Positions 12,444 through 64,000 of a stretch of 64,000 nucleotides of DNA are shown piece after piece. The position numbers and the translations under genes were made by a program. The stretch covers positions 62,001-126,000 of IMG/VR virus record IMGVR_UViG_3300005613_000002; one strand, 5' to 3'. The notes beneath the pieces are model-generated. The model worked only from the letters and a program-made list of their open reading frames with translations, was not told where the DNA came from and ran no database searches. How positions within the stretch are numbered: the first letter of the stretch is position 1; every line of letters begins with the position of its first letter.

Positions 12444-12448
12444 TAAAA

Positions 12449-13627: not shown

Positions 13628-13634
13628 AGTAACA

Positions 13635-14468: not shown

Positions 14469-14496
14469 AAATAAGACTATTAATTTTATGTAGATA

Positions 14497-15249: not shown

Positions 15250-15309
15250 ATAAACATACAAATAATAAATTCCATCTAACTTGTATTTATATGTACTAAA
15301 ACTATTATA

Positions 15310-15690: not shown

Positions 15691-17021
15691 TGAGTTTATC
15701 TGACGACAAAAGAAATGTTTTTACTACTATTGGTGCTTATACCTCTTTTATGAAGCAGGAGAAGCCACCAAAAAGGGGTGAGATATATCCATCAATTAAC
15801 AATAAAAATGATGTAGTTCCATTTCTATTAGATACATTAAAAACAATTGCAGGTAGTGAAGCATTAAAAGGTTTAATTGGAGGAATGTTTACTGAATTAA
15901 TTGATGATTCAGAAGCAAAGATGAAGACTGTCTTAAAAAAACAATTCATTCAACCAAATTCAGATGACCAAATTCCTGCTGATTTTAATAATAATGGTAT
16001 TGATGTACCTGTAAAAGATATTGATGTTACAGGTAAATTAAAAATAAATCCCAATTCGGATAGTGGAAAGATGTTGTTTGATAATAATAAACCAAATTTT
16101 GATAAAACAGCATATGATGCAATATTAAATAATGGTACTACACAATCTTTTGCTGGTATAGATATTAATTATAGTGATACTACTGATAGTTTTAATTTTA
16201 AACCAACTGATGGAAGTGTTAATATTGGTCAATATTTTACTGATTATATTGATAATACTGAAATAGTTAATAAAGATGAATTATTAACAACTGTAATGGA
16301 TAAAATTTATGGTACATTATCAAGTGAAAATAATAAAACACCTGATGAAGTATTACAAGAATTAGAAATCGATAAATTATTAAATCAAGCACTAGATGCT
16401 GATGATTCTTTCGAAATTAGTCCAGCAGATTTTGATGAACTAATAAATACTTCAGAACAAATATCAAATGGTGCTGTAGAATATGATATGGGTTGTGGTT
16501 TATTATCATCATCACTATCATTTGATTCATTAAAGGATTTATTAAATAATTTTTCAGGGTCAACAGACCCATTTTATATTGGTAATATAATTGAAGATAC
16601 TATTGTTCAAAGTTCAAGTGGTGATACAACTACTGAAGAAACAACAGAAGAAAATAATGCAACAATAAAAGATGGTTTTTTTCAAAAATTAATTAAATTA
16701 TTCACAACTAAATTATTATTTTTTTTAACGGCATCACCACAAATTAGAACACTATTAGCTATTTTAAGTTCGTTTCAAAATAATGGTACTGTTATGATTG
16801 AATCAGCTAAAAATGATTTAAAAAAATTTAAAACATTTATTCTTTGTTTAGCTAAAGAAATATTAAAAATGGTGAGTGAATTTATTTTCATGTTAGCAAT
16901 TGGATTGTTGATTGAATTATTAACACCAGTAATAAAAAAAATAGTAAAAGAAAAGGTTAATCAATTTGTTAAAATAATAAAAAGTTTAACTCCAGCGAGT
17001 AAAATTATTGATACAACATAA
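15690..17021 (+). CDS. Hypothetical (probably virion-associated) protein
   Basis: 443-aa ORF in the late operon preceding the gp5-like gene. Confidence 0.7.
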   Translation: MSLSDDKRNVFTTIGAYTSFMKQEKPPKRGEIYPSINNKNDVVPFLLDTLKTIAGSEALKGLIGGMFTELIDDSEAKMKTVLKKQFIQPNSDDQIPADFNNNGIDVPVKDIDVTGKLKINPNSDSGKMLFDNNKPNFDKTAYDAILNNGTTQSFAGIDINYSDTTDSFNFKPTDGSVNIGQYFTDYIDNTEIVNKDELLTTVMDKIYGTLSSENNKTPDEVLQELEIDKLLNQALDADDSFEISPADFDELINTSEQISNGAVEYDMGCGLLSSSLSFDSLKDLLNNFSGSTDPFYIGNIIEDTIVQSSSGDTTTEETTEENNATIKDGFFQKLIKLFTTKLLFFLTASPQIRTLLAILSSFQNNGTVMIESAKNDLKKFKTFILCLAKEILKMVSEFIFMLAIGLLIELLTPVIKKIVKEKVNQFVKIIKSLTPASKIIDTT

Positions 17022-17022
17022 T

Positions 17023-17430
17023 ATGGCAATGGATTTTAGTAATATAGATGATATAGTTGGTGGATTTACAAAAGTATTAAGTCTTTCCTCAGTAGGAGGT
17101 CCGCCACCAGTACCAACACCATTAATATTAATTGGTGTACCTTTACGTACTGGTTTATCACCAACTAAAATTGCGTCAAGAATTATCGCAAGAAAAAGTG
17201 AAGCTGGATTACCTGTTGGAGTTTTACCATCGGGTAATGTTAATCCAGATGAAATAATGGAACGAATTAGAGTTGAGGAAATTATTAATGCGTTTCAACA
17301 AGAAGCTATTATAACGGTGGCTATACCTCCCGGGATTACTCTCACAGCAGCAGGTATTTCACCAACAGGACCTGTATCAGTTTTTGGGTCAACTGTAATA
17401 TATTCAAAAGGTTATGGAGTAATACAATAA
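17023..17430 (+). CDS. Hypothetical baseplate-associated protein (possible spike tip)
   Basis: P/G-rich beta-type C-terminus; two genes upstream of the gp5-like spike. Confidence 0.5.
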   Translation: MAMDFSNIDDIVGGFTKVLSLSSVGGPPPVPTPLILIGVPLRTGLSPTKIASRIIARKSEAGLPVGVLPSGNVNPDEIMERIRVEEIINAFQQEAIITVAIPPGITLTAAGISPTGPVSVFGSTVIYSKGYGVIQ

Positions 17431-17636
17431 TGAAAGATTTAAAAAAATATACACCAACAGAATTATTAAAAATGATTAACGAAACTAAAGATAATCATAA
17501 TAATTTAAAAGAAGAAATAGTAAGTGATACATACAAAATGGATGAACTTGAAAAAAATATTAATTCAAAACTTGATATTTTAGATAAATATGAAAAAGAT
17601 TATATTACATTATTAGAAGAAATAAATAGTAGATAA
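17430..17636 (+). CDS. Small coiled-coil hypothetical protein
   Basis: 68 aa; TAATG coupling on both sides. Confidence 0.7.
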   Translation: MKDLKKYTPTELLKMINETKDNHNNLKEEIVSDTYKMDELEKNINSKLDILDKYEKDYITLLEEINSR

Positions 17637-18526
17637 TGGCATTTGATAAACATGAAATACATACATCAAATTCTTATAAAAAAGAAGGAAGTATACATAA
17701 AATCACCAGAACAATATATTATGGTGAGGTAATTTCTATTGATGACCCAACTGAGGGTGGTAGGATTAAGGTAAGAATTCTAAGTTTTGATAATAAAACA
17801 GCAAATGCTGATTTACCTTGGTGTTACCCTATGTTACCTAAATTTTTCCATATATATCCACAAATTGGTGAAATGGTTCGAATTTTCATTGAAGATATTA
17901 AATATCCTGAAATGAGTAGATTTTGGCAAGGTAGTGTTATATCACAACCACAAAAAATTGGATTTGATTCAGTATATACGGCATTATCAACAACTAATTA
18001 TCCATCAACTAATCCTGAACCAGCACCATCAACTAATCCTGATGCTATTGGTGTTTTTCCTAGAAAAGATGATGTTGCACTTATTGGTAAAGTTAATACA
18101 GATGTAATTTTAAGGACAAATGAAGTACATATACGTGCTGGTAAACATGAAAACGGTGATATTTTAAAATTAAATACAAAAAATCCTGCTCAAATTACTA
18201 TGGTCTTCGAAAGTGTTGAAGATAAGGATGAATATCAAAGCAGTACAATTATAACTAGTGATAAAATAGCATTATTATCACATACAGGTAATCCACAATT
18301 TAAATCAACAAAATTAGAAGCTAAAGATAGAGAAAGAATTTTCAATGAGGGTCATTCATTAGCCAGAGGTGATGTTTTAGTTGAAGCATTAGTGATAATA
18401 CGGAATGCATTGATTAACCATATTCATGGATATTCTGGTGTTGCTGCTGATAAAACAGCAATAATTAATGATTTAGAAAAAATTGATCTTACTTCAATAC
18501 TTCAAGAAAATATTGTTATTAATTAA
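17636..18526 (+). CDS. Baseplate central spike, gp5/gpV-like OB-fold, no lysozyme domain
   Basis: YYGEVISIDDP..GRIKVRI..LPWCYP..P.IGE.V OB-fold; C-terminal NHIH metal-binding motif. Confidence 0.8.
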   Translation: MAFDKHEIHTSNSYKKEGSIHKITRTIYYGEVISIDDPTEGGRIKVRILSFDNKTANADLPWCYPMLPKFFHIYPQIGEMVRIFIEDIKYPEMSRFWQGSVISQPQKIGFDSVYTALSTTNYPSTNPEPAPSTNPDAIGVFPRKDDVALIGKVNTDVILRTNEVHIRAGKHENGDILKLNTKNPAQITMVFESVEDKDEYQSSTIITSDKIALLSHTGNPQFKSTKLEAKDRERIFNEGHSLARGDVLVEALVIIRNALINHIHGYSGVAADKTAIINDLEKIDLTSILQENIVIN

Positions 18527-30549: not shown

Positions 30550-31674
30550 ATGAGTGAATCATATCAAGTACAGTATGCGGACATTTTAGATAAATTAATA
30601 AATGAACCGAGAAAAAAAAGACCATCACGAATAGGTAATATTCGTAGTAATTTTGTTGAATTAATGCGAGTTGATTTAACAAAAGAATTCCCATTGATGG
30701 ATTTAAAGAAAATTAAATTCAGTAATATTTTACATGAATTACTATGGTTTATTCATGGTGATACACATATTAAATATTTAATTGATAATGGGTGTAATAT
30801 TTGGACAGATGATGCATATAGATATTATTGTGAACAACTAACAAGAAAAAGGGAAGATTATGTTGAATTATATGGTGATAACCCAAATCTTGCAGGAAAA
30901 ACTCCTGATGATTTATTTAACCCAATAAGTAAAGAAAAATTCATCAAATTAGCAATAAATGGTAAAGGGGAAAATCATTATGGTGAGTTAGATAGGGTTT
31001 ATGGTAAACAATGGCGTGAATTTAATGGTAAGACAGATCAATTACAAAAATGTATTAATACGTTAATGACGAATCCTGATGATAGGAGAATGATTGTTTC
31101 TGCACATAATCCAACTGATATTGAAGATGAAATTGTTGGATTACCAAGTTGTCATAATATGTTTCAATTTTATACAATTCCATTAACATTTGAGGAAAGA
31201 TTGAAAATCAAAGAAGAAAAATACCCAATTGATACTGATGATTTAGATACCGAAGAAAAACTAGATAGATATAAGATTCCAAAATTTTATCTCTGTACAT
31301 GGTTTAATATACGTTCTAATGACTTTTTCTTAGGACAACCATATAATATGGCATCTTATGCGTTATTAACTCATATCGTTGCTAATGTTGTTAATATGAT
31401 ACCTAAAGAAGTAGTTTGCACTGCTATTGATTGTCATTTATATGAAGCACATATTGATGCATCAGAAAAATATCTTAAAAGATTTGAAAAAATTATGAAT
31501 GATAATCATATTTTTGGTAGAGGAATAAAAACTACACCAAGTGATGTGACTTATTGTAAATCAAAATTACATATTAAAAGAGATTTAAAATCAATTGATG
31601 ATGTAACTGCTGATGATATTAAATTGATTGATTATAATCCGCAATCATTTATTAAAGCACCATTATTAACTTAA
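30550..31674 (+). CDS. thyA: Thymidylate synthase
   Basis: ELLWF, IW..DA, YGKQWR, PDDRR, LPSCH, RSND.FLG.PYN and HLYE.H motifs. Confidence 0.95.
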   Translation: MSESYQVQYADILDKLINEPRKKRPSRIGNIRSNFVELMRVDLTKEFPLMDLKKIKFSNILHELLWFIHGDTHIKYLIDNGCNIWTDDAYRYYCEQLTRKREDYVELYGDNPNLAGKTPDDLFNPISKEKFIKLAINGKGENHYGELDRVYGKQWREFNGKTDQLQKCINTLMTNPDDRRMIVSAHNPTDIEDEIVGLPSCHNMFQFYTIPLTFEERLKIKEEKYPIDTDDLDTEEKLDRYKIPKFYLCTWFNIRSNDFFLGQPYNMASYALLTHIVANVVNMIPKEVVCTAIDCHLYEAHIDASEKYLKRFEKIMNDNHIFGRGIKTTPSDVTYCKSKLHIKRDLKSIDDVTADDIKLIDYNPQSFIKAPLLT

Positions 31675-32317: not shown

Positions 32318-32869
32318 TTAATTCCCTTTTGTTTCATATAAAAATGGAATAACATCCTCTTTTACTGGAACACCAGTGATTCGTTTCCAATATGGTTTGA
32401 ATCCACCAATTGTTTTCTTTGTTTCATCAGTAATATTATTAGCACTTTCAACTTCATAATATCTATTTTTTTCACCACTCATATTATATTCAACAATATC
32501 ACCACGATCAATTTCAATTTTTTTTTCTTCTAATTCTTTAAGATAAACACCGAAACTAATAATACCAGTATCATCACGACTAATCCCACCTTGAGCAGCA
32601 CCATAATATTCTTGTTGCCCATTATCAATATTAACCATTACGCTTATGCGCACTGGTTTCATAAACTTTTTATCTTTAGCTTTTGCTTGACCATATAGTG
32701 AATGAGATTTAGTATCAATTATGTTTATTTTATGAATAATAACTTCCTGTGCATTATCTGTTTGTAAGAAGTTTCGACCATACATAACATCTAAATCAAA
32801 CGAATTATCAGTCATAAATAATCCAAATCTATCATCTTCCAAATTTATTACTTGTTTTTTCTTTCTCAT
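32318..32869 (-). CDS. Head completion/neck protein (gp14-like)
   Basis: SLYGQA..KKF..PV, GDIV...YYEV pattern; in an operon with the gp13-like gene. Confidence 0.6.
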   Translation of the reverse strand: MRKKKQVINLEDDRFGLFMTDNSFDLDVMYGRNFLQTDNAQEVIIHKINIIDTKSHSLYGQAKAKDKKFMKPVRISVMVNIDNGQQEYYGAAQGGISRDDTGIISFGVYLKELEEKKIEIDRGDIVEYNMSGEKNRYYEVESANNITDETKKTIGGFKPYWKRITGVPVKEDVIPFLYETKGN

Positions 32870-33354
32870 TATGAAATTATTTTATACCCATCACTTTCAA
32901 CATTATTTAAATCTTTAATAAAATTTCGATATTGTTTATTTACAGCATTTGGTGGAACATTAGACCTATCAATACCAGTTTCAATATCATTACGAATTCT
33001 TTCATTACATATTTCAGGGTCAACATTGAATATTTTCGCAAATGCATCAAAATCTAATTCAGTGTTTTGTTTAATATAATCTAACATTCGTTTTCTATGA
33101 GAAGAATTAACATTAGTAGCATCAAATATCACACTATTTCCATCATTTATTGCTTTAATTGTTCTTTGAAAAGCAATTGGAAATACATCTTTATTTCTTG
33201 ATTGGTTTGAAACATCACCAGTTAATTCTCTACGAATATCATCAGGCGAAATAATTTCATACCCTAAATCTACAAGAGATTTAATCCATCTGGACTTTCC
33301 ACTTCCAGAAATACCAATAGGAATTATAAATTTTGGTTTAAAATTTTCTATCAT
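32869..33354 (-). CDS. Polynucleotide-kinase-like P-loop kinase (AAA_33)
   Basis: GISGSGKS, SPDDIR, DATN..R and R..VP motifs. Confidence 0.8.
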   Translation of the reverse strand: MIENFKPKFIIPIGISGSGKSRWIKSLVDLGYEIISPDDIRRELTGDVSNQSRNKDVFPIAFQRTIKAINDGNSVIFDATNVNSSHRKRMLDYIKQNTELDFDAFAKIFNVDPEICNERIRNDIETGIDRSNVPPNAVNKQYRNFIKDLNNVESDGYKIIS

Positions 33355-33373: not shown

Positions 33374-34048
33374 TTATCTTTTTCTTTCAACAGGCACACA
33401 GGCTTCACCATTTTCATTTAATAATTTACTTAAATCACTAGCATAAATAAATCCCTCTCCATTCACACCCCAAGTTTCACCCCATGAATTATGTAATCTT
33501 ATTATTGGGTCTGATAACATTTCCCAATGCCAACCATTTCTTTTCCTTACTTGAATTCCATTAGCTAAAATAGCATGACCACCAGCTAATTCACCAGTTG
33601 GATAAATAAACCCATCATCATCAGTATCAAACATTCCACTATACCAATTCACACCTAAAACAATAGGACCGTGATTTGATAACGTATTCATCACATCCTC
33701 AATACCAAATGCCCAACGATATTCACCCATAAACCCAATGCTATTTATTGTTTTAGCACCAGCAATAACACTAGTTCCATCATATTCAGTACCAGCCCAA
33801 GAATCCCATTGTTGAGCAGCATAATAGACAGTTTTTGCTGTATTATTAGTTACTGGTATTTTATATGGTATAGCATTTAATTCATGACTCCAAGCAAACC
33901 CAACACAAGCACCTTCACTTCCTTGGTCTAATAGTTCTTTACATTTCCAAACCTTATTTTTTAATTTTGTTGATGTTAATACTGATGAAATTGGGTAGTT
34001 TCTACTTCTATCATCAAATCTTACTTCTCTATCTAATTTTCTTTTCAT
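33374..34048 (-). CDS. Papain-like (C1) cysteine peptidase
   Basis: DQGSEGACVGF, GGHAI and HNSWG..WG..G catalytic motifs. Confidence 0.85.
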   Translation of the reverse strand: MKRKLDREVRFDDRSRNYPISSVLTSTKLKNKVWKCKELLDQGSEGACVGFAWSHELNAIPYKIPVTNNTAKTVYYAAQQWDSWAGTEYDGTSVIAGAKTINSIGFMGEYRWAFGIEDVMNTLSNHGPIVLGVNWYSGMFDTDDDGFIYPTGELAGGHAILANGIQVRKRNGWHWEMLSDPIIRLHNSWGETWGVNGEGFIYASDLSKLLNENGEACVPVERKR

Positions 34049-56917: not shown

Positions 56918-58231
56918 ATGAGTTTAGATTGTTTAAATAGTATAATTACAGATAATTTAGCAATTCACATTGACCTAACTGACAGTAAATCATGGAATTT
57001 AAATACTGATTTAATTGTTAATAGTTTAAATAAGTGGAATGAGGCAATTTCTGATGATATTGATCTAATTGACTTTGGATTAACAGGTTTTGATAATGGT
57101 AGAGTGGATTCTATGAATTCAGGAATAACATTAACTCAAAATGATAATAAATTAACACTTAATAGAGTTGGGTATAATGATATTAGTGGTGGTACTTATT
57201 ATAGTGGATATACTGTTACATCACATAGTGGTGCATCAGTAGGTAATTATTTTTCATTAAATGGTGGATATCTTCAAGGTTTTTTTAAATTAGAAGATTA
57301 TGATTTCGAATTATTTCCACCTCGATATAATAGTGGTATTACTATTGAAACAGTGATTGAAATATTACCAGAATCTGAAGGTACATTCTTTTTAATGGGT
57401 GTTAGAGCAGAAGATAAATATAATTCATTTTTTAGTGGTGAGACAACAATAACTGGAACAACTGAGGTATCATATGGCGGTAACTCAACTGGTCAATCAA
57501 TTCAATTTAGTGGAATCACAACAAGTGAAGATAATTATTTGGTATCATATGATGAAGATGAAGTAAATCTGAGTTCGTTCAAACAACCAGAATATAAAGA
57601 GTTTACAATATTTGATGAACCAATACAAGTTGATAATATTGGAAATAATATTATTTCGTTTGATATAACTGATTTAAAGAAGTTAAAATATAGATATGTT
57701 AATTCTGACGGTATTTTAGTTCAAAATGAATCATCTAATTCTATAAGTAGAACTGGTTGGACTATAATTGATATTGTATTTAAGCCATATTCGATTATTA
57801 ATGAATATGACCCAACAATTTATAAATGTTATGATAGAAGGAAAGGTGATCTTATTTTTTATGTAAATGGTAGAGTATTTTGGAAGATAAAAGATTTTGA
57901 TGAATTTTATTTTATTGGAATTAATAATGATAAAGAAAAACAATTAGGTGTTCCATATAATATTAGTTGGGGTGGTGGTTCATTTGGTTTGAAACATTCT
58001 TGGCATTTTAATAATTTCAATCGTAATGAAATTATACAAGATGAAACAAAAAATGATTTATTTATTGAAAAATATTTTAATTCATCATTTATTGGAAACA
58101 TACAAAAATTAAGAATATATGATACAGCATTATTATCAAACGAAATATTAAATAACACAATTATTGAATCTAAAAACAATACTTATTATAATATTTCCGT
58201 TTCTAAAGGTGGTAGAATAATATATAGATAA
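56918..58231 (+). CDS. LamG/concanavalin-like virion protein
   Basis: ITIET, FYVNG and FIGNIQKLRIYDTAL LamG-type motifs; late motif at 56892. Confidence 0.6.
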   Translation: MSLDCLNSIITDNLAIHIDLTDSKSWNLNTDLIVNSLNKWNEAISDDIDLIDFGLTGFDNGRVDSMNSGITLTQNDNKLTLNRVGYNDISGGTYYSGYTVTSHSGASVGNYFSLNGGYLQGFFKLEDYDFELFPPRYNSGITIETVIEILPESEGTFFLMGVRAEDKYNSFFSGETTITGTTEVSYGGNSTGQSIQFSGITTSEDNYLVSYDEDEVNLSSFKQPEYKEFTIFDEPIQVDNIGNNIISFDITDLKKLKYRYVNSDGILVQNESSNSISRTGWTIIDIVFKPYSIINEYDPTIYKCYDRRKGDLIFYVNGRVFWKIKDFDEFYFIGINNDKEKQLGVPYNISWGGGSFGLKHSWHFNNFNRNEIIQDETKNDLFIEKYFNSSFIGNIQKLRIYDTALLSNEILNNTIIESKNNTYYNISVSKGGRIIYR

Positions 58232-58287
58232 TAACAATCACTTGACAACAAAAAAAATTATAGTTATTTTTATACAAAAATATTAAT

Positions 58288-58530
58288 ATGACAATATTAT
58301 CAGAAATATATGCAGGTTGGAAGAATTTCATTTTCGAAAATCCAAATGTTGAAGCCGAAGCAAAAAGAAGAATTGAAATTTGTACAGGAAATGAAGAAAA
58401 AAATATAAAAAAGTGTGACCACTTTAGAAATAATAAAACTTGTGCTAAATGTGGTTGTTATATGCCAGCTAAAGCTAGAAGTCCAAAATCTCGTTGTCCT
58501 GTTGGTAATTGGAAGTTAAGGTCTGTTTAA
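58288..58530 (+). CDS. Small Cys-rich Zn-binding protein (DUF6171-like)
   Basis: RRIEIC...C...CAKCGC.M..KAR....CP.G.W; near-consensus host promoter at 58242-58272. Confidence 0.65.
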   Translation: MTILSEIYAGWKNFIFENPNVEAEAKRRIEICTGNEEKNIKKCDHFRNNKTCAKCGCYMPAKARSPKSRCPVGNWKLRSV

Positions 58531-58938
58531 TGTTATTACATATGTGTCTTCTAAGGACACACCTTTAAATTCGTTGGATTTTAATGTTGTTTTATTAAAT
58601 GCGTCAATTATTACAGTTTCGTTGTTTACTTGTAGTTTAAGTTTTCCACTTACACATATAATAGTATGTATATAATCCCTTTTTTCTAATTCTAATACAG
58701 TACCTTTTGGGATAAAATGAAAAACCGTTATATCTTCTGGTTTTTCATTATCGTTTATTGTTTTATATCTAATTTCATCATTATGGTTACAATTTTCCCA
58801 ATTAGTAAAAAATCTAATAACAATCCCATCATCAATATCATGGACGCTTGGAATTTCTATTTTACTTAAAAGTTGTGCTTCCTTTTTATCAATTAAAAAA
58901 TTAATCTTATCTAATATTTTTTGTTTTTCAACGTTCAT
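58516..58938 (-). CDS. Cupin-like hypothetical protein
   Basis: FHFIPKG...IICVSGKLKL...SLEDT beta-barrel pattern. Confidence 0.45.
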   Translation of the reverse strand: MNVEKQKILDKINFLIDKKEAQLLSKIEIPSVHDIDDGIVIRFFTNWENCNHNDEIRYKTINDNEKPEDITVFHFIPKGTVLELEKRDYIHTIICVSGKLKLQVNNETVIIDAFNKTTLKSNEFKGVSLEDTYVITLNRP

Positions 58939-58941
58939 ATT

Positions 58942-59541
58942 TTAACAAAATTGAGATATTGCTGATTTATTTATATTATCACGTATGTCCATAGTAGTTT
59001 CAGTTGAAATAAAACCACTTACATATTCTCTAATAAATAAATTTTTTATATTTATAGGTGCTTTTTCAAAAGCTAAAAATTTTAGTTCCTCACCATCATC
59101 ACTAAATAATGATATTTCGATATCCTCCCAATTAATATAATTAAACCAAGCATTACCTGATGGTGGCGTATTATAATCACCACTATCACTTTCACCACTT
59201 GCTGTTACACTAATATTACTACTATTAAATTCTAATGCTAGTTTTATTGGGTCTTTATTTGAATCATATAAATATTCAATATTAAGTCCATATTCAATAG
59301 TAATATTATTCATTTCATCGTAACTGGATTCAAAATCTCCACCTATTGATGCATTAGTTGTTTCAATTATTTTAATTTTGTTATTTTGCCTTAATAGCGA
59401 GTCACAAATAAATTGTTTTTGTAATTCCTCATTGTTAAGTAAGTCAATGTATTCTTGATATTTAACATTTGTGTCATTATTAAGAAAATCAAAATTGTTG
59501 ATTTCTTCGGTTATAATTTTTTGAAAATTAATTTTATACAT
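58942..59541 (-). CDS. Hypothetical late protein
   Basis: KIITEEI N-terminus; late motif at 59558. Confidence 0.65.
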   Translation of the reverse strand: MYKINFQKIITEEINNFDFLNNDTNVKYQEYIDLLNNEELQKQFICDSLLRQNNKIKIIETTNASIGGDFESSYDEMNNITIEYGLNIEYLYDSNKDPIKLALEFNSSNISVTASGESDSGDYNTPPSGNAWFNYINWEDIEISLFSDDGEELKFLAFEKAPINIKNLFIREYVSGFISTETTMDIRDNINKSAISQFC

Positions 59542-59741
59542 TGATTATAATTTTGTAATAAATACTCATAATTTTTATTAAATCGAAAAAAAATATTAAA
59601 AATCATTGTATTTATAATTGAAAAATGACTGCGCTTGCTTAATCAATGAATTAAGTTACGTTTTCTATGACAAATTAGCATGATTTTTTTAATTTTATAG
59701 CCAGATAGTGGTTACGTGAAATTTTAAACTTAATAATTTAT

Positions 59742-59776
59742 AAAAATGCATCAAATTTAGGGTGCATTTTTTTTTT
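59742..59776 (+). terminator. Intrinsic terminator closing a short transcript
   Basis: AAAAATGCATC-N8-GGTGCATTTTT followed by a long T run. Confidence 0.75.
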
Positions 59777-59809
59777 ATTATTATTTATATAAAATAATAT
59801 AGTTAAATA

Positions 59810-60301
59810 ATGAAGATAATTGGAGAACACACACATAATTTTTCTGCATTAATGATACAATTAGGAATGCATATTGACCATTTAATAAATGGGAATCCTA
59901 TTAATGGTAGAGTCTATAATCATATATTAATTGAACATGATGGTTATGTATATGAAGCAATTGGTCATGGTGTGGTAAAATGGACATTAGCAGAACACAA
60001 TGCACAACGTAAAGTTAAAAATCATTGTAAACGAATTGAATTTAATCTCGATCTAACTAAAATTGAATTACATAAAGCATTAAGTTATTTAGAAAATCAA
60101 AAAGGTAAAAAATATGAATATGCTAATTTTTATTGGCATTTAAAAAAAATATTCACTAATAAATGGAAAGGTGATAAAACTGATAAGAAATTATATTGTA
60201 CTGAATTGGTTATCCGTGCTATGAATTTTACTGGAAAATATAATATTGACCCATATTTAAATCCAATTGAAATTAGAGAACTACTAAGAATTATTATTTA
60301 A
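59810..60301 (+). CDS. Permuted papain-like (YaeF/YiiX, NlpC/P60 superfamily) amidase
   Basis: NHILI..YEA..GV before KGKKYE and LYCTELV (His precedes Cys). Confidence 0.7.
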   Translation: MKIIGEHTHNFSALMIQLGMHIDHLINGNPINGRVYNHILIEHDGYVYEAIGHGVVKWTLAEHNAQRKVKNHCKRIEFNLDLTKIELHKALSYLENQKGKKYEYANFYWHLKKIFTNKWKGDKTDKKLYCTELVIRAMNFTGKYNIDPYLNPIEIRELLRIII

Positions 60302-60345
60302 AAATGAAAAATAATATAAATTTTTATTATTTTTTTTAAAAAGTA

Positions 60346-60375
60346 TTGTATTTATGATTTTAATGCGTATATTTG
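60346..60375 (+). promoter_or_regulatory. Host-type promoter (with overlapping late motif) for the leader/tRNA operon
   Basis: TTG-N19-TATATTTG; GTATTTAT at 60348-60355. Confidence 0.75.
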
Positions 60376-60406
60376 CATTATAATTTAGTGTTTAACAATT
60401 AGTATT

Positions 60407-60490
60407 ATGAAAAATTTAGTGAACATACAGCATCAACCCGTACAACATCCACAGGATATCGTTGAATGGGTAGATTATGTTCAAACTTAA
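60407..60490 (+). CDS. Attenuator leader peptide rich in Gln/His/Pro
   Basis: MKNLVNIQHQPVQHPQDIVEWVDYVQT*; 8 of 9 consecutive codons (60428-60454) are Q/H/P, matching the downstream tRNAs. Confidence 0.85.
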   Translation: MKNLVNIQHQPVQHPQDIVEWVDYVQT

Positions 60491-60520
60491 ATTTTTCCGA
60501 GAGAAGTTTTAATTTAGGGC

Positions 60521-60556
60521 AAAAAGTTCCATTCTATTTAGAGTGGAACTTTTTTT
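60521..60556 (+). terminator. Attenuator terminator upstream of the first tRNA
   Basis: AAAAAGTTCCATTCT-ATTT-AGAGTGGAACTTTTTTT; its 5' arm can alternatively pair with GAATGGG at 60464-60470. Confidence 0.85.
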
Positions 60557-60563
60557 GTTATAT

Positions 60564-60658
60564 CTGGGATTGAACGAGTGGTTGAAGTTACCAGCCTTGG
60601 AAACTGGTGAGGGCGATAAGATGGTTGTCCTCCGTGGGTTCGAACCCCACATCCCAGA
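60564..60658 (+). tRNA. tRNA-Pro(UGG) on a Ser-like class II scaffold
   Basis: Acceptor CTGGGAT/ATCCCAG, A73; anticodon arm CCAGC-CTTGGAA-ACTGG; 8-bp variable stem; T arm GTGGG-TTCGAAC-CCCAC. Confidence 0.8.
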
Positions 60659-60660
60659 CA

Positions 60661-60803
60661 AATGAATAATGGTAGTGTTAATATTATATATGGAGTAACT
60701 TGATGAATCCTTGAAGGAACGCTTGGTGAAAAATAGTAAAAGTATATAACAACAACACGCTAGTCGAAGATGACTGGAGTTATAGGCGAAAATCCTATTC
60801 ATT
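60661..60803 (+). ncRNA. tRNA-like structured ncRNA 1
   Basis: End pairing AATGA/TCATT; ATAATGGTA D-loop-like segment; long helix GTGTT..TTATATA/TATATAA..AACAC; hairpin CTAGTC/GACTGG; T-arm-like ATAGG-CGAAAAT-CCTAT. Confidence 0.55.
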
Positions 60804-60815
60804 GTTTATAAATAT

Positions 60816-60901
60816 GGTGATTGTTGCAGAGTGGTCAAATGCGCCAGATTGTGGTTCTGGTATCCGAAAGGATTTCGTGGGTTCGAAACCCATCATTCAC
60901 C
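60816..60901 (+). tRNA. tRNA-His(GUG) on a Tyr-like class II scaffold
   Basis: G-1:C73; anticodon arm CCAGA-TTGTGGT-TCTGG; variable arm ATCC-GAAA-GGAT. Confidence 0.85.
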
Positions 60902-60908
60902 CAAAAAT

Positions 60909-61021
60909 AATTAGTTACCCTGCTTGTTCCGTATGGGGTTATAAAAATACATCAATTAACGGAACTCATGATGGAGTCCTTGCCAAGAAAGTAGGATAAA
61001 GATGTTAGATATTAACTAATT
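60909..61021 (+). ncRNA. Structured ncRNA 2, possibly pseudoknotted
   Basis: Closing stem AATTAGTTA/TAACTAATT; GTTCCGT/ACGGAAC; TCCT/AGGA hairpin; loop ACATC can pair with GATGT. Confidence 0.5.
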
Positions 61022-61030
61022 TATAAATAT

Positions 61031-61105
61031 CGGGTAGTTATGCAGATGGCTATACAACGATGCCTTGGACGCATCGGTTCGCAGGTTCGAATCCTGCCTA
61101 TCCGA
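61031..61105 (+). tRNA. tRNA-Pro(UGG), atypical D arm, A37
   Basis: CGGGTAG/CTATCCG, A73; CGATGC-CTTGGAC-GCATCG; GCAGG-TTCGAAT-CCTGC. Confidence 0.75.
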
Positions 61106-61113
61106 CATAATAT

Positions 61114-61186
61114 AGAGTAGTAGCGCAGTTGGTAGCGTACTGCATTTGGGATGCAGGGGTCGCAGGTTCAAGTCCTGTCTACTCTA
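61114..61186 (+). tRNA. tRNA-Pro(UGG), class I, G37
   Basis: AGAGTAG/CTACTCT, A73; CTGCA-TTTGGGA-TGCAG; canonical D and T arms. Confidence 0.88.
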
Positions 61187-61188
61187 CT

Positions 61189-61260
61189 GTGTTAGTAGCA
61201 TAACTGGCTAATGCGCCACACTGTGAATGTGGAGAATAGGGTTCGAGTCCCTCTAACACC
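61189..61260 (+). tRNA. tRNA-His(GUG), class I, A37, 4-bp T stem
   Basis: GTGTTAG/CTAACAC, C73; CCACA-CTGTGAA-TGTGG; AGGG-TTCGAGT-CCCT. Confidence 0.8.
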
Positions 61261-61266
61261 CAACTT

Positions 61267-61350
61267 AGTCCTATGGTGGAATTGGTAAACACATCGTCCT
61301 TTGAAGGCGACACCCGAAAGGGTTTGTAGGTTCGAGTCCTACTAGGATTG
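61267..61350 (+). tRNA. tRNA-Gln(UUG) on a Leu-like class II scaffold
   Basis: AGTCCTA/TAGGATT, G73; D arm GTGGAATTGGTAAACAC; TCGTC-CTTTGAA-GGCGA; variable arm ACCC-GAAA-GGGT. Confidence 0.85.
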
Positions 61351-61383
61351 CAAAAGTGTGAAAAACATACTTTATTAAGACGA

Positions 61384-61471
61384 AAGAAGATTCAGAGATG
61401 GTTGACATTCATGTAACCAATAGCTCGATAATGGTAGGGTTATAGTGAAAAGTGATAATAATCTTCTTCCA
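61384..61471 (+). ncRNA. Structured ncRNA 3 ending in CCA
   Basis: Closing stem AAGAAGATT/AATCTTCTT + CCA; hairpin TGGTT-G-ACAT/ATGT-AACCA; ATAATGGTAG shared with ncRNA 1. Confidence 0.5.
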
Positions 61472-61505
61472 ATATGAAGTACAAGTATTGGATAGTCTTT
61501 TTTAT

Positions 61506-61580
61506 TGCCCATTGGTGTAATTGGCTAACACATCTGATTTTGATTCAGAAGACTTATAGGTTCGAATCCTATATGGGCAA
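61506..61580 (+). tRNA. tRNA-Gln(UUG), class I, A37
   Basis: TGCCCAT/ATGGGCA; TCTGA-TTTTGAT-TCAGA; ATAGG-TTCGAAT-CCTAT. Confidence 0.9.
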
Positions 61581-61633
61581 CTTTTCTCTTGCTACTTATT
61601 ATTTTTTTAATTATATTTATGAAAAATATAATT

Positions 61634-61831
61634 ATGGATGCAGAAGAACTATTGAAATATCTAAAAAAATGTGTTGAAGACCTAAATTTAGGTTATGAAC
61701 CAATTATAACTCCAACAAAGTCAGACCCAAGAAAATATCAAACAGATGTGTCTATTATTGTTATGGAAAAAGCATTGGTGGGTAATAGACCAATATTCAA
61801 AATAAACGTAAAAGATTTAATAAAAGGATAA
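61634..61831 (+). CDS. Hypothetical protein
   Basis: Likely start MDAEELL; first ORF after the tRNA array. Confidence 0.6.
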   Translation: MDAEELLKYLKKCVEDLNLGYEPIITPTKSDPRKYQTDVSIIVMEKALVGNRPIFKINVKDLIKG

Positions 61832-61832
61832 T

Positions 61833-62117
61833 ATGATTTACAAACTAAAACATGTTCCAACTGGTTTATATTATCAACCACATAGACATCGAGGTAGCAA
61901 TTTAAGTAAAAGAGGTAAAATTTATCAAACTTCTACTCATGGTCTATCATCAGCATTTAAAAATAAAAGAGCAACATTTACTGTTTATTGTGAAAAAGAT
62001 AGTCGCATATATAAATTATGTAATAATATTTTAAATTTCGAAGATTATAGATTTTCATATAATCAAGTAAAAGCTGAAACAAAAGTAAGTGATTGGATAA
62101 TTGAAGAAATTAAATAA
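61833..62117 (+). CDS. Hypothetical protein
   Basis: 94 aa, YKLKHVPTGLYY...LSKRGKIY. Confidence 0.65.
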   Translation: MIYKLKHVPTGLYYQPHRHRGSNLSKRGKIYQTSTHGLSSAFKNKRATFTVYCEKDSRIYKLCNNILNFEDYRFSYNQVKAETKVSDWIIEEIK

Positions 62118-62122
62118 AAACA

Positions 62123-62521
62123 ATGAAATATAATTTATTCTTAGATGATGTTAGAAACCCGATTGATTGTGTATACTACATGTATACACCAATATATACT
62201 AGTGTTGACTGGGTGATAGTTAGAGATTATAATTCTTTTATTAAAATAATTAAAGAAAATGGTTTACCTGAAATAATCTCCTTCGATCATGATTTATCTG
62301 ATGAACATTATGACCCAAAAATGTATCATGAATCATATGATGAATTATATGATTCATTTAAAGAAAAAACTGGTTACGAATGTGCTAAATGGTTGGTAGA
62401 TTATTGTATTGATAATAATGAATTTCTACCAAAAAAAATATTAGTACATTCAATGAATCCTATTGGTAGACGAAATATTGAGTCTTATTTCGAATCATAT
62501 AATAAATCATTAAAATTATAG
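62123..62521 (+). CDS. Cyclic-phosphate-processing receiver (cREC)-domain protein
   Basis: LFLDD.R.P, ISFDHDL, KTGYECAKWL and VHSMNP.G motifs. Confidence 0.75.
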   Translation: MKYNLFLDDVRNPIDCVYYMYTPIYTSVDWVIVRDYNSFIKIIKENGLPEIISFDHDLSDEHYDPKMYHESYDELYDSFKEKTGYECAKWLVDYCIDNNEFLPKKILVHSMNPIGRRNIESYFESYNKSLKL

Positions 62522-62590
62522 TTTAATAATTATTTTATTAAGTTCTTAATTTTTATATTTTCTTTTGTATTTATTTAAAAACACAATATT

Positions 62591-64000
62591 ATGAAACATA
62601 CAAGAGAAGCAATAGGAGTAACATATGATGAATTAACAACTTTAATTGGGTCTGCTAGTTTAACTGTAGGACAAACATATAAAATTACTGATTATCAAAC
62701 TGTTCATTATTTAATTGATGGTGATGGTGGTGATGTGGTTTTAGAAGGTGGAACAGGTGATACTGTCGTTCATACAGGAAATACTGAGGCATTAGTTGTA
62801 ACAGCACTTACTGGTGAAGAATTATCACCAATTGCATATAGTGAAGAATATCTATATGATATTATTCATTATGATTGGAATCCTAATAATTGGTTGTTTG
62901 ACTTAGGTTTTAGTGCTTATGATGAAGCAGTAGTAACAGGATTTAAAGGTGTTATTTATTATAGAGAAGACACACAAAATAATAATATTTTCGGATATGA
63001 TTTCCGTAATGTAATGAATCGTAGATGGGTATTGGATTATGGAGAATGGACAGGTACAACAACATATAATTTTGCTGATAAGGTTCAAGTAGAAGGTGAT
63101 GGTCTTTATATGTCAACAAAAAATAATAACACAGACAATGCAGTTAGTGCTACAACATATTGGGATAAAATTGTTGATTATTCTAATTATTCATATTGGT
63201 GTTTAAATTCTGGTGATGCACAAGATATTGAAGATTATATTGATTCATTAACATTTAATGATAGTGAAGGTTCTTATGAGGATATTGTGAAAAATAATAT
63301 ATTCACTACAAATAAAGACAATACAGACATAGGAATGAGTCCAACTAATTCTATTTTGGATAATAATGTGTTTTATTTATTAGATGATGGAGCATTTAAT
63401 TTATCAGGTAATAAGTTTGGTGTTTATTTTCAATGTAACACTATTGATGGGAATTATTTCAATAATAACTCATTAGGTAATAATTGTAGTTCAAACACTA
63501 TAAGTCGTAATTTTGAGAATAATAAAATTGAAAATTCATTTAATGGTAATTTTATTGGTTATTCTTTTGATTCTAACATTATAGGAAATTATTTTCAAAC
63601 TAACACAATTGGAAGTGGTTTTGGTAAAAATTTAATTGGGAATTATTACCAAAATAATATAATTTCTGATGGTTTCATAAGTAATATAATTGGAAATTAC
63701 TTTTCAGGAAATGATGCAATTGGAAGTGATTTTGCTGAAAACTCAATTGGTAGTGATTTTCAAAGTGTTGAAGTTGGGACTGGATTTACTAATAACACAA
63801 TAGCAAATAGTTTTAAAAGTTCTTTTACTGTTGATGATTTCCATAATAATACAATAAAAGATGATGTTACTAGCATTAATTTTGCTTCAATGACACATGC
63901 TTATGAGGATTATAATTGTGAAGTGTTTTTAACTGCTAATGATGATTATAGATTATCATATTTTAATGCAAGTGATGTGCTTACTATTGTAGCTACAACA
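62591..64000 (+). CDS. Tail fibre/spike-like beta-helix protein, runs off the window edge
   Basis: Not in the track. MKHTREAIGVTYDELTTLIGSASLTVGQTYKITDYQT..., later tandem F.xNxIG repeats; late motif at 62567. Confidence 0.7.
   Translation, partial: MKHTREAIGVTYDELTTLIGSASLTVGQTYKITDYQTVHYLIDGDGGDVVLEGGTGDTVVHTGNTEALVVTALTGEELSPIAYSEEYLYDIIHYDWNPNNWLFDLGFSAYDEAVVTGFKGVIYYREDTQNNNIFGYDFRNVMNRRWVLDYGEWTGTTTYNFADKVQVEGDGLYMSTKNNNTDNAVSATTYWDKIVDYSNYSYWCLNSGDAQDIEDYIDSLTFNDSEGSYEDIVKNNIFTTNKDNTDIGMSPTNSILDNNVFYLLDDGAFNLSGNKFGVYFQCNTIDGNYFNNNSLGNNCSSNTISRNFENNKIENSFNGNFIGYSFDSNIIGNYFQTNTIGSGFGKNLIGNYYQNNIISDGFISNIIGNYFSGNDAIGSDFAENSIGSDFQSVEVGTGFTNNTIANSFKSSFTVDDFHNNTIKDDVTSINFASMTHAYEDYNCEVFLTANDDYRLSYFNASDVLTIVATT

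What the first reader, a model, noticed from the sequence alone, without database searches (positions are those of the whole stretch)
61634..62521. Protein cargo behind the tRNA array includes a cyclic-phosphate-processing domain
Seen: three tightly spaced ORFs follow the last tRNA with no strong terminator that I can see in between. The last has cREC receiver motifs. Established: this family is predicted to act on 2',3'-cyclic phosphate RNA ends, the product of anticodon nucleases. Inference: the attenuator co-induces replacement tRNAs and repair or anti-defence proteins, so the two small unknown ORFs are anti-defence candidates.
Basis: partly seen in the sequence, partly recalled or inferred. 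Interest (0 to 1): 0.65.

Follow-up and report, generated by a model that had tools for sequence, protein, structure and literature searches.

The report
cREC phosphoesterase cargo behind phage tRNA array
Three real, conserved genes sit at the tail of a jumbo-phage tRNA operon that a Pro/His/Gln-rich leader peptide appears to switch on when those tRNAs run short. The last gene is a predicted, never-assayed cyclic-phosphate esterase, most plausibly a tRNA-end repair enzyme.

Summary
ORF A (61634-61831, 65 aa), ORF B (61833-62117, 94 aa) and ORF C (62123-62521, 132 aa) follow the last tRNA-Gln with gaps of 52, 1 and 5 nt. No terminator-like site lies between them. ORF C is a clear cREC_REC protein (Pfam E 1.2e-23).

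New here: cREC is the conserved anchor. It lies behind the same Pro/His/Gln array in every well-sampled relative, sometimes only 17-21 nt after the tRNA. In two unrelated phages it follows a different array. ORF A precedes cREC in 10 of 80 viral loci; ORF B is only loosely linked.

The genome also encodes an Rnl1-type RNA ligase, a standalone AAA_33 kinase and a CCA-adding/2H-phosphodiesterase fusion. It has no RtcB and no Pnkp-type phosphatase.

Function remains inferred, because cREC has never been assayed. Several relatives carry promoter-like motifs before the cargo, so co-transcription is likely but unproven. Nothing marks ORF A or ORF B as anti-defence proteins.

The parts
60368..60375 (+). 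Promoter-like -7 element TATATTTG (Bacteroidetes type TAnnTTTG), 39 nt before the leader ATG
   Evidence: It is the only TAnnTTTG on the + strand between 59548 and 63067. The same TATATTTGCAT sequence sits upstream of the leader in L030. Genome-wide, 14 of 44 TATATTTG copies lie 8-70 nt upstream of an ORF start. Promoter function is inferred.
60407..60490 (+). Leader ORF, 27 aa: MKNLVNIQHQPVQHPQDIVEWVDYVQT (9 Pro/His/Gln codons)
   Evidence: Equivalent leaders occur in L002/L003, L004, L023-L026, L029, L030 and in L038, L060, L065, L066, L074, L077, L079.
60464..60471 (+). Antiterminator segment GAATGGGT (codons E-W-V at the leader end), complementary to the 5' arm of the hairpin
   Evidence: 94% of cells are paired across 9 loci, but the pairs are almost invariant, so there is no covariation support.
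60521..60554 (+). Intrinsic-terminator-like hairpin plus T-run, 9 nt before the first tRNA
   Evidence: 96% of cells paired and 3 pairs with compensatory changes. In 500 shuffles, 0 reached the observed covariation score and 3 reached the observed number of compensatory pairs.
60564..61581 (+). Array of 7 tRNA genes: Pro, His, Pro, Pro, His, Gln, Gln. Three have long variable arms.
   Evidence: ARAGORN; Rfam tRNA model at 34-68 bits.
61612..61619 (+). Degenerate -7-like motif TATATTTA in the 52-nt spacer before ORF A
   Evidence: The homologous spacers in relatives carry an intact TAnnTTTG (TATATTTG in L002, L005 and L025; TAATTTTG in L029 and L030; TAACTTTG in L024).
61634..61831 (+). ORF A, 65 aa. 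A small alpha+beta protein with no conserved polar or catalytic residues; a recurrent upstream neighbour of cREC.
   Evidence: The AF2 model has low confidence (pLDDT 63.7).
61833..62117 (+). ORF B, 94 aa. A basic protein with the conserved motif YKLKHVPTGLYYQPHKHRGSNLSKRGKIYQT; a family of Bacteroidota phages.
   Evidence: The AF2 model has pLDDT 94.8. There is no credible PDB match. Atlas and BFVD return only uncharacterised phage proteins.
62123..62521 (+). ORF C, 132 aa, cREC_REC domain protein (predicted cyclic-phosphate phosphoesterase)
   Evidence: Invariant residues across 44 homologues: D8, D9, R11, P13, D55, H56, D57, T83, G84, W90, H109, S110, N112, G115, N118.
62591..64000 (+). Start of a 473-aa repeat-rich ORF (ends at G000 126012) on the same strand. 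It may belong to the same unit, because no terminator or -7 motif separates it from cREC.
   Evidence: No Pfam family. In most relatives a convergent gene follows cREC instead.
32869..33354 (-). Standalone P-loop kinase (AAA_33), a candidate 5'-end-healing partner encoded elsewhere in the window
   Evidence: E 1.8e-20. Its role in RNA repair is inferred.

Best explanation
The span is the protein-coding tail of a phage tRNA operon.

Transcription most likely starts at a Bacteroidetes-type promoter near 60368. It then passes a 27-codon leader ORF rich in Pro, His and Gln codons and meets a terminator hairpin 9 nt before the first tRNA. When charged Pro-, His- or Gln-tRNA is scarce, the ribosome stalls in the leader. 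The GAATGGG segment at the leader's end stays free to pair with the 5' arm of the hairpin, and RNA polymerase reads on. The read-through transcript carries seven Pro/His/Gln tRNAs followed by ORF A, ORF B and cREC. RNase P and RNase Z processing of the tRNAs would release the mRNA.

cREC is the conserved cargo. It is a Rec-fold phosphoesterase with the invariant DD...DHD...HSxN constellation. Its most likely job is to open or remove 2',3'-cyclic phosphate (or 3'-phosphate) ends on damaged tRNAs. The phage's standalone kinase, Rnl1-type ligase and CCA-adding/2H enzyme could then restore those tRNAs.

ORF A is a small non-catalytic companion of cREC. ORF B is an independent accessory protein of unknown fold.

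Shown: the gene reality, cREC membership, the anatomy, and the conservation of the arrangement. Inferred: co-transcription, the stalling logic, the substrate, and any partnership between the proteins.
For: Anatomy and cREC membership.

cREC lies behind the Pro/His/Gln array in these relatives:
- L002/L003, L004, L005.
- L023 (18-nt gap), L026 (21 nt), L024 (tandem cREC) and L025.
- L029 and L030.

Among 80 IMG/VR cREC loci, 41 have tRNAs within 3 kb and 23 have a same-strand tRNA ending within 1 kb upstream. L054 and L088 have a different array and a different GC content, and there cREC starts 23-25 nt after tRNA-Ser. A convergent gene follows cREC in L002, L023, L024 and L026, which makes cREC the last gene of the unit.

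Attenuator: leader peptides in at least 16 loci, a hairpin with compensatory changes, and conserved antiterminator complementarity. A second attenuator of the same design precedes the next array. Its leader (…LAIVVMLDAVLLWDDAEEL…) matches the downstream Asp/Glu/Leu/Val/Ala/Trp tRNAs.

Repair toolkit in the same genome:
- Rnl1-type ligase (PF09511, E 4.8e-18).
- AAA_33 kinase.
- CCA-adding enzyme fused to 2H/tRNA_lig_CPD domains.
- No RtcB and no Pnkp-type HAD phosphatase.

The family's published contexts include Rnl1, kinase and cREC gene neighbourhoods (PMC9503650). ORF A precedes cREC in 10 of 80 loci, whereas ORF B does so in 2 of 80.
Against: - No cREC protein has been assayed. The family is equally predicted to act on ADP-ribose-derived cyclic phosphates. 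Some cultured-phage contexts are NAD-centred, such as NAPRT-sirtuin-NUDIX-cREC in Klebsiella phage Muenster.
- cREC is not next to the ligase or the kinase in this genome. They lie about 12 kb and 29 kb away.
- The phage already has a 2H cyclic phosphodiesterase domain, so cREC is not obviously needed for that step.
- Six of ten relatives carry a TAnnTTTG motif between the last tRNA and the cargo. L030 has a 161-aa opposite-strand gene inserted there. Both are compatible with an own promoter.
- Half of the 80 cREC loci (39) have no tRNA within 3 kb, and none of 7 other cultured or reference phage loci does.
- Many of the supporting loci are related phages, so they are not independent observations.
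- No RNA data could be obtained.
Confidence: 0.45

Rival explanations
1. cREC is a counter-signalling enzyme rather than an RNA repair enzyme. It would hydrolyse cyclic nucleotide or ADP-ribose-derived immune messengers (Thoeris, CBASS or type III CRISPR type), by analogy with the 2H enzyme Acb1. On this reading its place in the tRNA region reflects early expression and an accessory-gene hotspot.
For: The family was defined partly from NAD/ADPr contexts and is predicted to process ADPr derivatives. Klebsiella phage Muenster has NAPRT-sirtuin-NUDIX-cREC. Cellulophaga phi17:2 has a Macro-domain gene 3 kb away. In L004 a nucleoside-deoxyribosyltransferase-like gene lies near cREC. One metagenomic protein, P0103, joins the ORF B N-terminus to an Acb2/Tad1 hairpin domain, which hints that sponge genes occur at this locus in some relatives.
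Against: This genome has no sirtuin and no Acb2/Tad1 domain. Its one Nudix gene is 104 kb away. The repeated placement of cREC 17-25 nt behind a tRNA, including behind a different array in unrelated phages, is not explained by this reading. The P0103 fusion sits on a 618-bp contig and could not be traced.
Confidence: 0.2
2. The cargo is transcribed from its own promoter, and its position behind the array is inherited synteny without regulatory coupling.
For: TAnnTTTG motifs lie in the tRNA-to-cargo spacer of L002, L005, L024, L025, L029 and L030. The roughly 50-nt segment upstream of ORF A is conserved in L030 even though a 161-aa opposite-strand gene separates it from the array. The tRNA region of these phages is full of small variable genes.
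Against: In the window the motif is degenerate (G to A in TTTG), and no other TAnnTTTG lies between 60368 and 63067. L023, L026, L057 and L077 leave only 17-21 nt between the tRNA and cREC, too little for a separate promoter with a 5' leader. There is no terminator anywhere between the array and the cargo. An internal promoter would add to read-through rather than replace it.
Confidence: 0.25
3. cREC serves routine maturation or quality control of the phage's own tRNAs, for example clearing phosphorylated 3' ends before CCA addition. On this reading it does not repair defence-inflicted damage, and the attenuator is plain supply-and-demand control for an AT-rich phage.
For: The array tRNAs do not encode CCA. 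The phage carries its own CCA-adding enzyme fused to phosphodiesterase domains. Aeromonas phage P19 has cREC three genes from a tRNA nucleotidyltransferase. The leader senses charged tRNA, not cleavage as such.
Against: Canonical RNase P and RNase Z processing leaves no cyclic or 3' phosphate (established knowledge). Rfam finds no self-cleaving ribozyme in the array or its spacers. Half of the cREC loci have no tRNA nearby.
Confidence: 0.1
4. ORF A and/or ORF B are inhibitors of host tRNA-targeting or other defence systems.
For: Both are small, conserved, phage-restricted proteins without enzymatic motifs, and both sit in a unit that would be induced by tRNA shortage. The ORF B family spans jumbo, Lak and crAss-like phages of Bacteroidota. 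The P0103 fusion links ORF B to an Acb2/Tad1 domain.
Against: There is no match to any anti-defence family in Pfam or PHROGs. ORF A tracks cREC rather than any defence context. ORF B occurs away from both tRNAs and cREC in L007, Lak-A2 and cr128_1. The evidence amounts to position alone.
Confidence: 0.2

Closest known systems
cREC (cyclic-phosphate processing Receiver) domain family, Pfam PF20274 (Iyer et al. 2021, PMC7824862; Iyer et al. 2022, PMC9503650)
   Same: Full-length HMM match. The family's acidic DD and D-H-D motifs are invariant. It is a standalone protein of about 130 aa in a jumbo phage, with no histidine kinase nearby, and the genome also carries an RNA ligase and a kinase.
   Different: Here it is the terminal gene of a tRNA operon behind a leader-peptide attenuator, a context those papers do not describe. 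It is not adjacent to a ligase, sirtuin or Nudix gene.
Phage T4 Pnkp + Rnl1 tRNA repair against the PrrC anticodon nuclease (own knowledge)
   Same: An Rnl1-type ligase is present, along with a polynucleotide-kinase-like P-loop kinase and a candidate 3'-end phosphoesterase (cREC).
   Different: There is no bifunctional Pnkp and no Pnkp-type HAD phosphatase. The three genes are dispersed over about 40 kb. The healing step would be done by an unrelated fold. No cognate nuclease is known.
Leader-peptide transcription attenuators of amino-acid operons (his, trp, leu, thr, pheA; own knowledge)
   Same: A short ORF with clustered regulatory codons, an intrinsic terminator, and an alternative pairing that overlaps the end of the leader ORF.
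   Different: The regulated products are the cognate tRNAs plus a phosphoesterase, not biosynthetic enzymes. Three amino acids are sensed at once. It sits in a phage, probably one infecting Bacteroidota. I found no description of such a system in the searchable library.
Mixed tRNA-protein operons such as E. coli thrU-tyrU-glyT-thrT-tufB (own knowledge)
   Same: tRNAs and a translation-related protein on one transcript, with the mRNA released by tRNA processing.
   Different: The cargo here is a predicted RNA-end phosphoesterase plus small unknown proteins, and expression is gated by an attenuator.
Phage tRNA arrays as a counter-measure to tRNA-targeting defences (van den Berg et al. 2023, PMC10264068)
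   Same: A large phage-encoded tRNA set that could replace depleted host tRNAs.
   Different: This case adds demand-sensing control and a linked putative end-healing enzyme. Resistance of these tRNAs to any nuclease is untested.
Acb1 / 2H phosphodiesterases and Acb2/Tad1 sponges (anti-CBASS, anti-Thoeris)
   Same: cREC is predicted to be catalytically analogous to 2H enzymes. One ORF B-like fragment is fused to an Acb2/Tad1 hairpin domain.
   Different: cREC has a different fold from 2H enzymes. ORF B itself and this genome have no Acb2/Tad1 match. The genome's Acb1-like 2H segment lies in another protein.

Membership tests
cREC_REC (PF20274) | Match to the family HMM above the curated cut-off over the whole domain | tested here: met
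   84 bits against a cut-off of 27, E 1.2e-23, profile positions 1-87 of 88. Confirmed on the genome. All 120 listed homologues carry PF20274.
cREC_REC (PF20274) | Conserved acidic residues equivalent to the Receiver active site (DD after strand 1, D at the end of strand 3) | tested here: met
   D8, D9, D55 and D57 (plus H56, S110 and N112) are invariant in 44 sequences. Their assignment to strands follows the published topology, not a model made here.
cREC_REC (PF20274) | Receiver-like (flavodoxin-like) three-dimensional fold | not tested
cREC_REC (PF20274) | Never associated with histidine kinases | tested here: met
   No kinase-type neighbour in the window or in about 20 inspected loci.
cREC_REC (PF20274) | Operonic linkage to RNA ligase or NAD/ADPr-processing genes | tested here: not met
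   Its neighbours are tRNAs and unknown small ORFs. The Rnl1-type ligase is about 12 kb away. There is no sirtuin and the Nudix gene is distant.
cREC_REC (PF20274) | Hydrolysis of 2',3'-cyclic phosphate RNA ends or ADPr>p | not testable with these tools
   This is a prediction only, and PMC9503650 states the domain is experimentally uncharacterised. No later assay was found.
Leader-peptide transcription attenuator | Short ORF with clustered codons for the sensed amino acids | tested here: met
   9 of 27 codons are Pro, His or Gln in the window. There are 7-10 in equivalent leaders of at least 15 other loci.
Leader-peptide transcription attenuator | Intrinsic terminator between the leader and the regulated genes | tested here: met
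   Hairpin plus T-run at 60521-60554. 96% of cells paired and 3 compensatory pairs across 9 loci.
Leader-peptide transcription attenuator | Mutually exclusive antiterminator pairing that involves the end of the leader ORF | tested here: inconclusive
   7-8 complementary bases are conserved (94% paired), but they are invariant and coding-constrained, so covariation says nothing.
Leader-peptide transcription attenuator | Read-through responds to the charging level of the cognate tRNAs | not testable with these tools
   No RNA runs were listed.
T4-type Pnkp/Rnl1 tRNA repair | Rnl1-family ligase | tested here: met
   PF09511, E 4.8e-18, at G000 135768-136856 inside the tRNA region.
T4-type Pnkp/Rnl1 tRNA repair | Bifunctional kinase-phosphatase Pnkp | tested here: not met
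   Only a 161-aa kinase (AAA_33) is present. There is no PNK3P/HAD phosphatase match in the genome.
Acb2/Tad1 sponge (considered for ORF B) | Acb2_Tad1_hairpin domain (PF24729) | tested here: not met
   No hit for ORF B or for 66 family members, and none in the genome. The only hit is the chimeric fragment P0103.

The most novel reading that the evidence does not exclude
A phage senses the loss of usable Pro-, His- and Gln-tRNA through a leader peptide. In a single transcript it then answers with replacement tRNAs and a new kind of tRNA-end healing enzyme (cREC, assisted by ORF A). This would be a demand-induced tRNA rescue operon aimed at host tRNases, with ORF B as a further counter-defence factor of novel fold.
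Probability: 0.25. Interest if true: 0.85.

Novelty: new variant of a known kind. Interest (0 to 1): 0.6.

Why it matters
cREC occurs in up to 18% of jumbo phages (PMC9503650), yet it has no measured activity. This locus gives it a sharp, testable context. It is the conserved last gene of a tRNA operon whose expression appears to be tied to shortage of the very tRNAs it accompanies.

If the coupling is real, it links three themes that have been studied separately: phage tRNA arrays, tRNA-targeting immunity and RNA end repair. It also points to substrates worth trying first, namely 2',3'-cyclic-phosphate tRNA halves or tRNA 3' ends.

The work also delimits two uncharacterised protein families. 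ORF A is a likely cREC companion. ORF B is a confidently folded protein with no structural relative, found across jumbo, Lak and crAss-like phages of Bacteroidota.

If instead the cargo is independently transcribed, or cREC acts on nucleotide signals, the locus is an ordinary accessory-gene patch.

Tried and rejected
- **DNA and sequence searches.** Megablast of 58000-64000 against GenBank phages found nothing. A single-sequence search for cREC loci in IMG/VR found nothing; the profile search worked. PDB sequence searches gave nothing usable for cREC or for the ORF B profile.
- **ORF B fold.** Foldseek against PDB gave no hit at E <= 0.001; the best rows were weak T4 MotA C-terminal domain matches (TM about 0.35). 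VIA-align against 48,161 chains gave a best Z of 3.8. Several WWE (iso-ADP-ribose-binding) domains scored Z 2.3-3.0, which is below any meaningful level, so I treat them as a lead only. Atlas feature searches for ORF A and ORF B were blank.
- **ORF A fold.** The AF2 model was too uncertain (pLDDT 63.7) to search with.
- **ORF A fusions.** Longer ORF A-containing proteins (P0231, P0237, P0272) gave no informative Pfam domain.
- **Complex prediction.** The cREC + ORF A job returned no verdict (score 0.01). This is no evidence either way.
- **Expression.** The RNA-run search failed once and then listed none.
- **Acb2/Tad1 lead.** P0103's partner gene could not be found in P0056-type contigs or IMG/VR.
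- **crAss neighbour.** cr128_1 gp066, next to the ORF B homologue, is not cREC-like (hhalign probability 0.4%). It matches PDB 2obb.
- **Genetic code.** An alternative code for this genome was rejected: table 11 gives 90-99% ORF coverage in the large-gene regions, and reading TAG as sense adds little. Table 15 was used only to list ORFs in the Lak-A2 locus, a phage group known for TAG recoding (own knowledge).
- **Ribozymes.** The idea that ribozymes create cyclic-phosphate tRNA ends found no support: Rfam shows nothing but tRNAs in 59500-62800.
Full report
**Setting.** The window is bases 62001-126000 of a 321,624-bp IMG/VR virus record with direct terminal repeats. The genome is 27.5% G+C and carries 45 tRNA genes and a tmRNA. 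Most of the tRNAs lie between 122 and 160 kb. Table 11 fits the genome. Distant homologues of ORF B occur in Prevotella Lak megaphages and in a crAss-like phage. A Por-secretion tail domain lies beside the closest GenBank cREC. Both point to a Bacteroidota host.

**The observation.**
- ARAGORN and the Rfam tRNA model agree on seven tRNAs at 60564-61581: Pro, His, Pro, Pro, His, Gln, Gln.
- Three + strand ORFs follow: ORF A 61634-61831, ORF B 61833-62117 and ORF C 62123-62521. The gaps are 52, 1 and 5 nt.
- The terminator scan finds only two + strand sites in 59500-63000, both upstream of the array.
- The next + strand site is at G000 126787, past the window end.
- ORF C matches Pfam cREC_REC at E 1.2e-23, 84 bits against a cut-off of 27, and PHROG 1479.

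**Are the small ORFs genes?** Yes.
- ORF B has 104 homologues of 44-83% identity, many on contigs of 100-330 kb. Its N-terminal motif is nearly invariant.
- ORF A has few close relatives. A profile search of 1.84 billion representatives finds 47 proteins, almost all 60-80 aa.
- Those homologues begin M-[EDN]-A-E-E-L, which fixes the ORF A start at 61634.

**What the relatives show.**
- Contigs carrying ORF B or cREC homologues repeat the arrangement: L002/L003, L004, L005, L023-L026, L029 and L030.
- The shared plan is a Pro/His/Gln tRNA array, then a variable handful of small ORFs, then cREC. A convergent gene usually follows, and the next (Asp/Glu/Val) array lies about 2-2.5 kb further on.
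- The order of ORF A and ORF B is permuted in some relatives (B-A-cREC in L002 and L005).
- In L005 a LAGLIDADG gene splits the block. In L030 a 161-aa opposite-strand gene sits between the array and ORF A. L024 has two tandem cREC genes.
- In L023 and L026 there are no small ORFs at all, and cREC starts 18 and 21 nt after tRNA-Gln.
- Among the 80 best IMG/VR cREC loci (46-66% identity), 41 have tRNAs within 3 kb. In 23 a same-strand tRNA ends within 1 kb upstream, and the gap can be as small as 17 nt.
- L054 and L088 have higher G+C and a different array, and there cREC begins 23-25 nt after tRNA-Ser(GCU).
- ORF A homologues lie upstream of cREC in 10 of the 80 loci, abutting it in several. 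ORF B does so in 2.
- By contrast, seven loci from cultured or reference phages have no tRNA nearby, and 39 of the 80 loci have none within 3 kb.

So cREC is the anchor of the cargo, ORF A is a frequent companion, and ORF B is a looser passenger. The tRNA link is recurrent but not universal, and many of the supporting loci are related to one another.

**The attenuator.**
- A 27-codon ORF at 60407-60490 reads MKNLVNIQHQPVQHPQDIVEWVDYVQT.
- Equivalent leaders with runs such as QPQPQQHPQ precede the array in at least 15 other loci.
- Each is followed by a G+C-containing hairpin and a T-run.
- On an alignment of nine loci, 96% of hairpin cells pair and three pairs show compensatory changes. None of 500 shuffles reached the observed covariation score, and 3 reached the observed count of compensatory pairs.
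- The codons E-W-G/V at the leader's end (GAATGGG) are complementary to the hairpin's 5' arm. This complementarity is conserved but invariant, so covariation is silent.
- A Bacteroidetes-type -7 motif, TATATTTG, lies 39 nt before the leader.
- Just past the window a second unit of the same design precedes the next array. It has a -33 TTTG and -7 TACCTTTG, a leader reading …LAIVVMLDAVLLWDDAEEL…, and a hairpin whose 3' arm is duplicated in the leader. The downstream tRNAs are Asp, Glu, Leu, Val, Ala and Trp.

This anatomy is that of a classical leader-peptide attenuator. Here it gates the cognate tRNAs and, if nothing intervenes, the cargo.

**Is the cargo co-transcribed?**
- For: there is no terminator. 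The gaps are 17-21 nt in L023, L026, L057 and L077. In the window no TAnnTTTG lies on the + strand between 60368 and 63067.
- Against: the tRNA-to-cargo spacer carries an intact TAnnTTTG in L002, L005, L024, L025, L029 and L030. The window has the same sequence with G changed to A (TATATTTA, 61612-61619).
- An internal promoter would supplement read-through rather than abolish it.
- No RNA runs were listed, so the question stays open. I rate co-transcription in this genome at about 0.7.

**What cREC may do.**
- The family was named from comparative genomics. It is a Rec-like domain that is never found with histidine kinases. It is found with RNA ligases, sirtuin, Nudix and related genes, and it retains the catalytic aspartates.
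- It is predicted to resolve 2',3'-cyclic RNA ends or ADPr-derived cyclic phosphates. PMC9503650 says it remains experimentally uncharacterised, and I found no later work.
- In 44 homologues D8, D9, R11, P13, D55, H56, D57, H109, S110 and N112 are invariant.
- The genome supplies plausible partners. These are an Rnl1-type ligase inside the tRNA region, a standalone AAA_33 kinase, and an 1819-aa protein joining a CCA-adding enzyme to 2H/tRNA-ligase-CPD phosphodiesterase domains.
- RtcB, sirtuin, the Pnkp-type phosphatase and Acb2/Tad1 are all absent.
- A ligase plus a kinase without a Pnkp phosphatase resembles the published rV5-type neighbourhood of Rnl1, cREC and kinase. That resemblance makes a 3'-end-healing role the best guess.
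- The 2H domain could do part of that job, and NAD-centred contexts exist elsewhere. The signal-degrading rival therefore stays alive.

**ORF A and ORF B.**
- The ORF A family has no invariant polar residue and a predicted helix plus three-stranded sheet of low confidence. This fits a binding partner or modulator, not an enzyme.
- ORF B folds with high confidence (pLDDT 94.8) but has no credible solved relative. It matches only uncharacterised phage proteins.
- In crAss-like phage cr128_1 the ORF B homologue is followed by a gene annotated as polynucleotide kinase/phosphatase-like. That gene matches PDB 2obb and is not cREC. This is a second, weak hint of a tie to RNA-end enzymes.
- A 618-bp contig encodes the ORF B N-terminus fused to an Acb2/Tad1 hairpin domain. 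I could not trace this fusion.
- Nothing positively marks either protein as anti-defence.

**Verdict.** The cargo is a new context for a known but unassayed family. The most interesting element is the attenuator-tRNA-cREC coupling, which is directly testable.

Noticed in passing
window 60368-60563: Complete leader-peptide attenuator in front of the Pro/His/Gln tRNA array: a -7-like TATATTTG, a 27-aa leader with 9 Pro/His/Gln codons, an antiterminator segment, and a covarying terminator hairpin. It is conserved in at least 16 loci. I found no published description.
   Followed up: yes
G000 126580-126820 (580-820 nt past the window end; L119 2581-2821): A second attenuator of the same design. 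Its leader (…LAIVVMLDAVLLWDDAEEL…) matches the downstream Asp/Glu/Leu/Val/Ala/Trp tRNAs. The hairpin's 3' arm is duplicated inside the leader.
   Followed up: partly
window 60564-60659, 60817-60902, 61267-61351: tRNA-Pro(UGG) of 96 nt, tRNA-His(GUG) of 86 nt and tRNA-Gln(UUG) of 85 nt carry long variable arms, normally a feature of Leu, Ser and Tyr tRNAs. Long Pro and Gln versions recur in relatives (20 of 89 Pro, 30 of 100 Gln). Their arm stems covary, and they keep Pro-like C1-G72/A73 and Gln-like U1-A72/G73 ends.
   Followed up: partly
window 60660-60816, 60903-61030, 61352-61505: Three spacers of 128-157 nt lie inside the array. Relatives often have spacers of under 10 nt. Rfam finds no family in them, and their content is unexplained.
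   Followed up: no
G000 12430-17889, minus strand (outside the window; L118): An 1819-aa ORF joins a CCA-adding enzyme (residues about 1027-1391) to a 2H/Acb1-like phosphoesterase (1448-1549) and a fungal-tRNA-ligase-type CPD domain (1613-1697). The first roughly 1000 residues are unassigned.
   Followed up: partly
G000 135768-136856 (outside the window; L014 1345-2433): An Rnl1-type RNA ligase (PF09511, E 4.8e-18) lies inside the tRNA region, next to a DNA-methylase-like gene. A second RNA_ligase-family gene lies near 270.6 kb.
   Followed up: partly
L024 3645-4387: Two tandem, overlapping cREC genes (119 and 128 aa) lie behind the array in a 338-kb contig. R2K-clade ATP-grasp genes are embedded in or beside the arrays of L004, L005/L006 and L024.
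   Followed up: no
P0103 (618-bp ENA contig) and P0093: In P0103 the ORF B N-terminal 41 residues are fused in frame to an Acb2/Tad1 hairpin domain (E 1.5e-8). P0093 ends with the same C-terminal peptide. This is either a natural deletion fusion or a chimeric assembly.
   Followed up: partly
G000 159544-159617 and 132007-132367 (outside the window): The genome carries a suppressor-type tRNA with anticodon CUA and a phage tmRNA, yet ORF statistics give no sign of TAG recoding.
   Followed up: partly
relatives, between the hairpin and the first tRNA (e.g. L025 about 2995-3010; L119 2838-2848): A conserved GTTCTTTG(A) motif lies between the attenuator hairpin and the first tRNA in most relatives and before the window genome's Asp array. 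It is absent before the window's Pro array, where the tRNA starts 9 nt after the hairpin.
   Followed up: no
window 33374-34048 (-) and 30550-31674 (+): A papain-family (Peptidase_C1) domain protein lies next to the AAA_33 kinase, and a thymidylate synthase with a roughly 100-residue insertion lies nearby.
   Followed up: no
L005 about 2680-2879: Upstream of this relative's first tRNA there is no leader or hairpin. Instead there is a G+C-rich, apparently structured segment of unknown nature.
   Followed up: no
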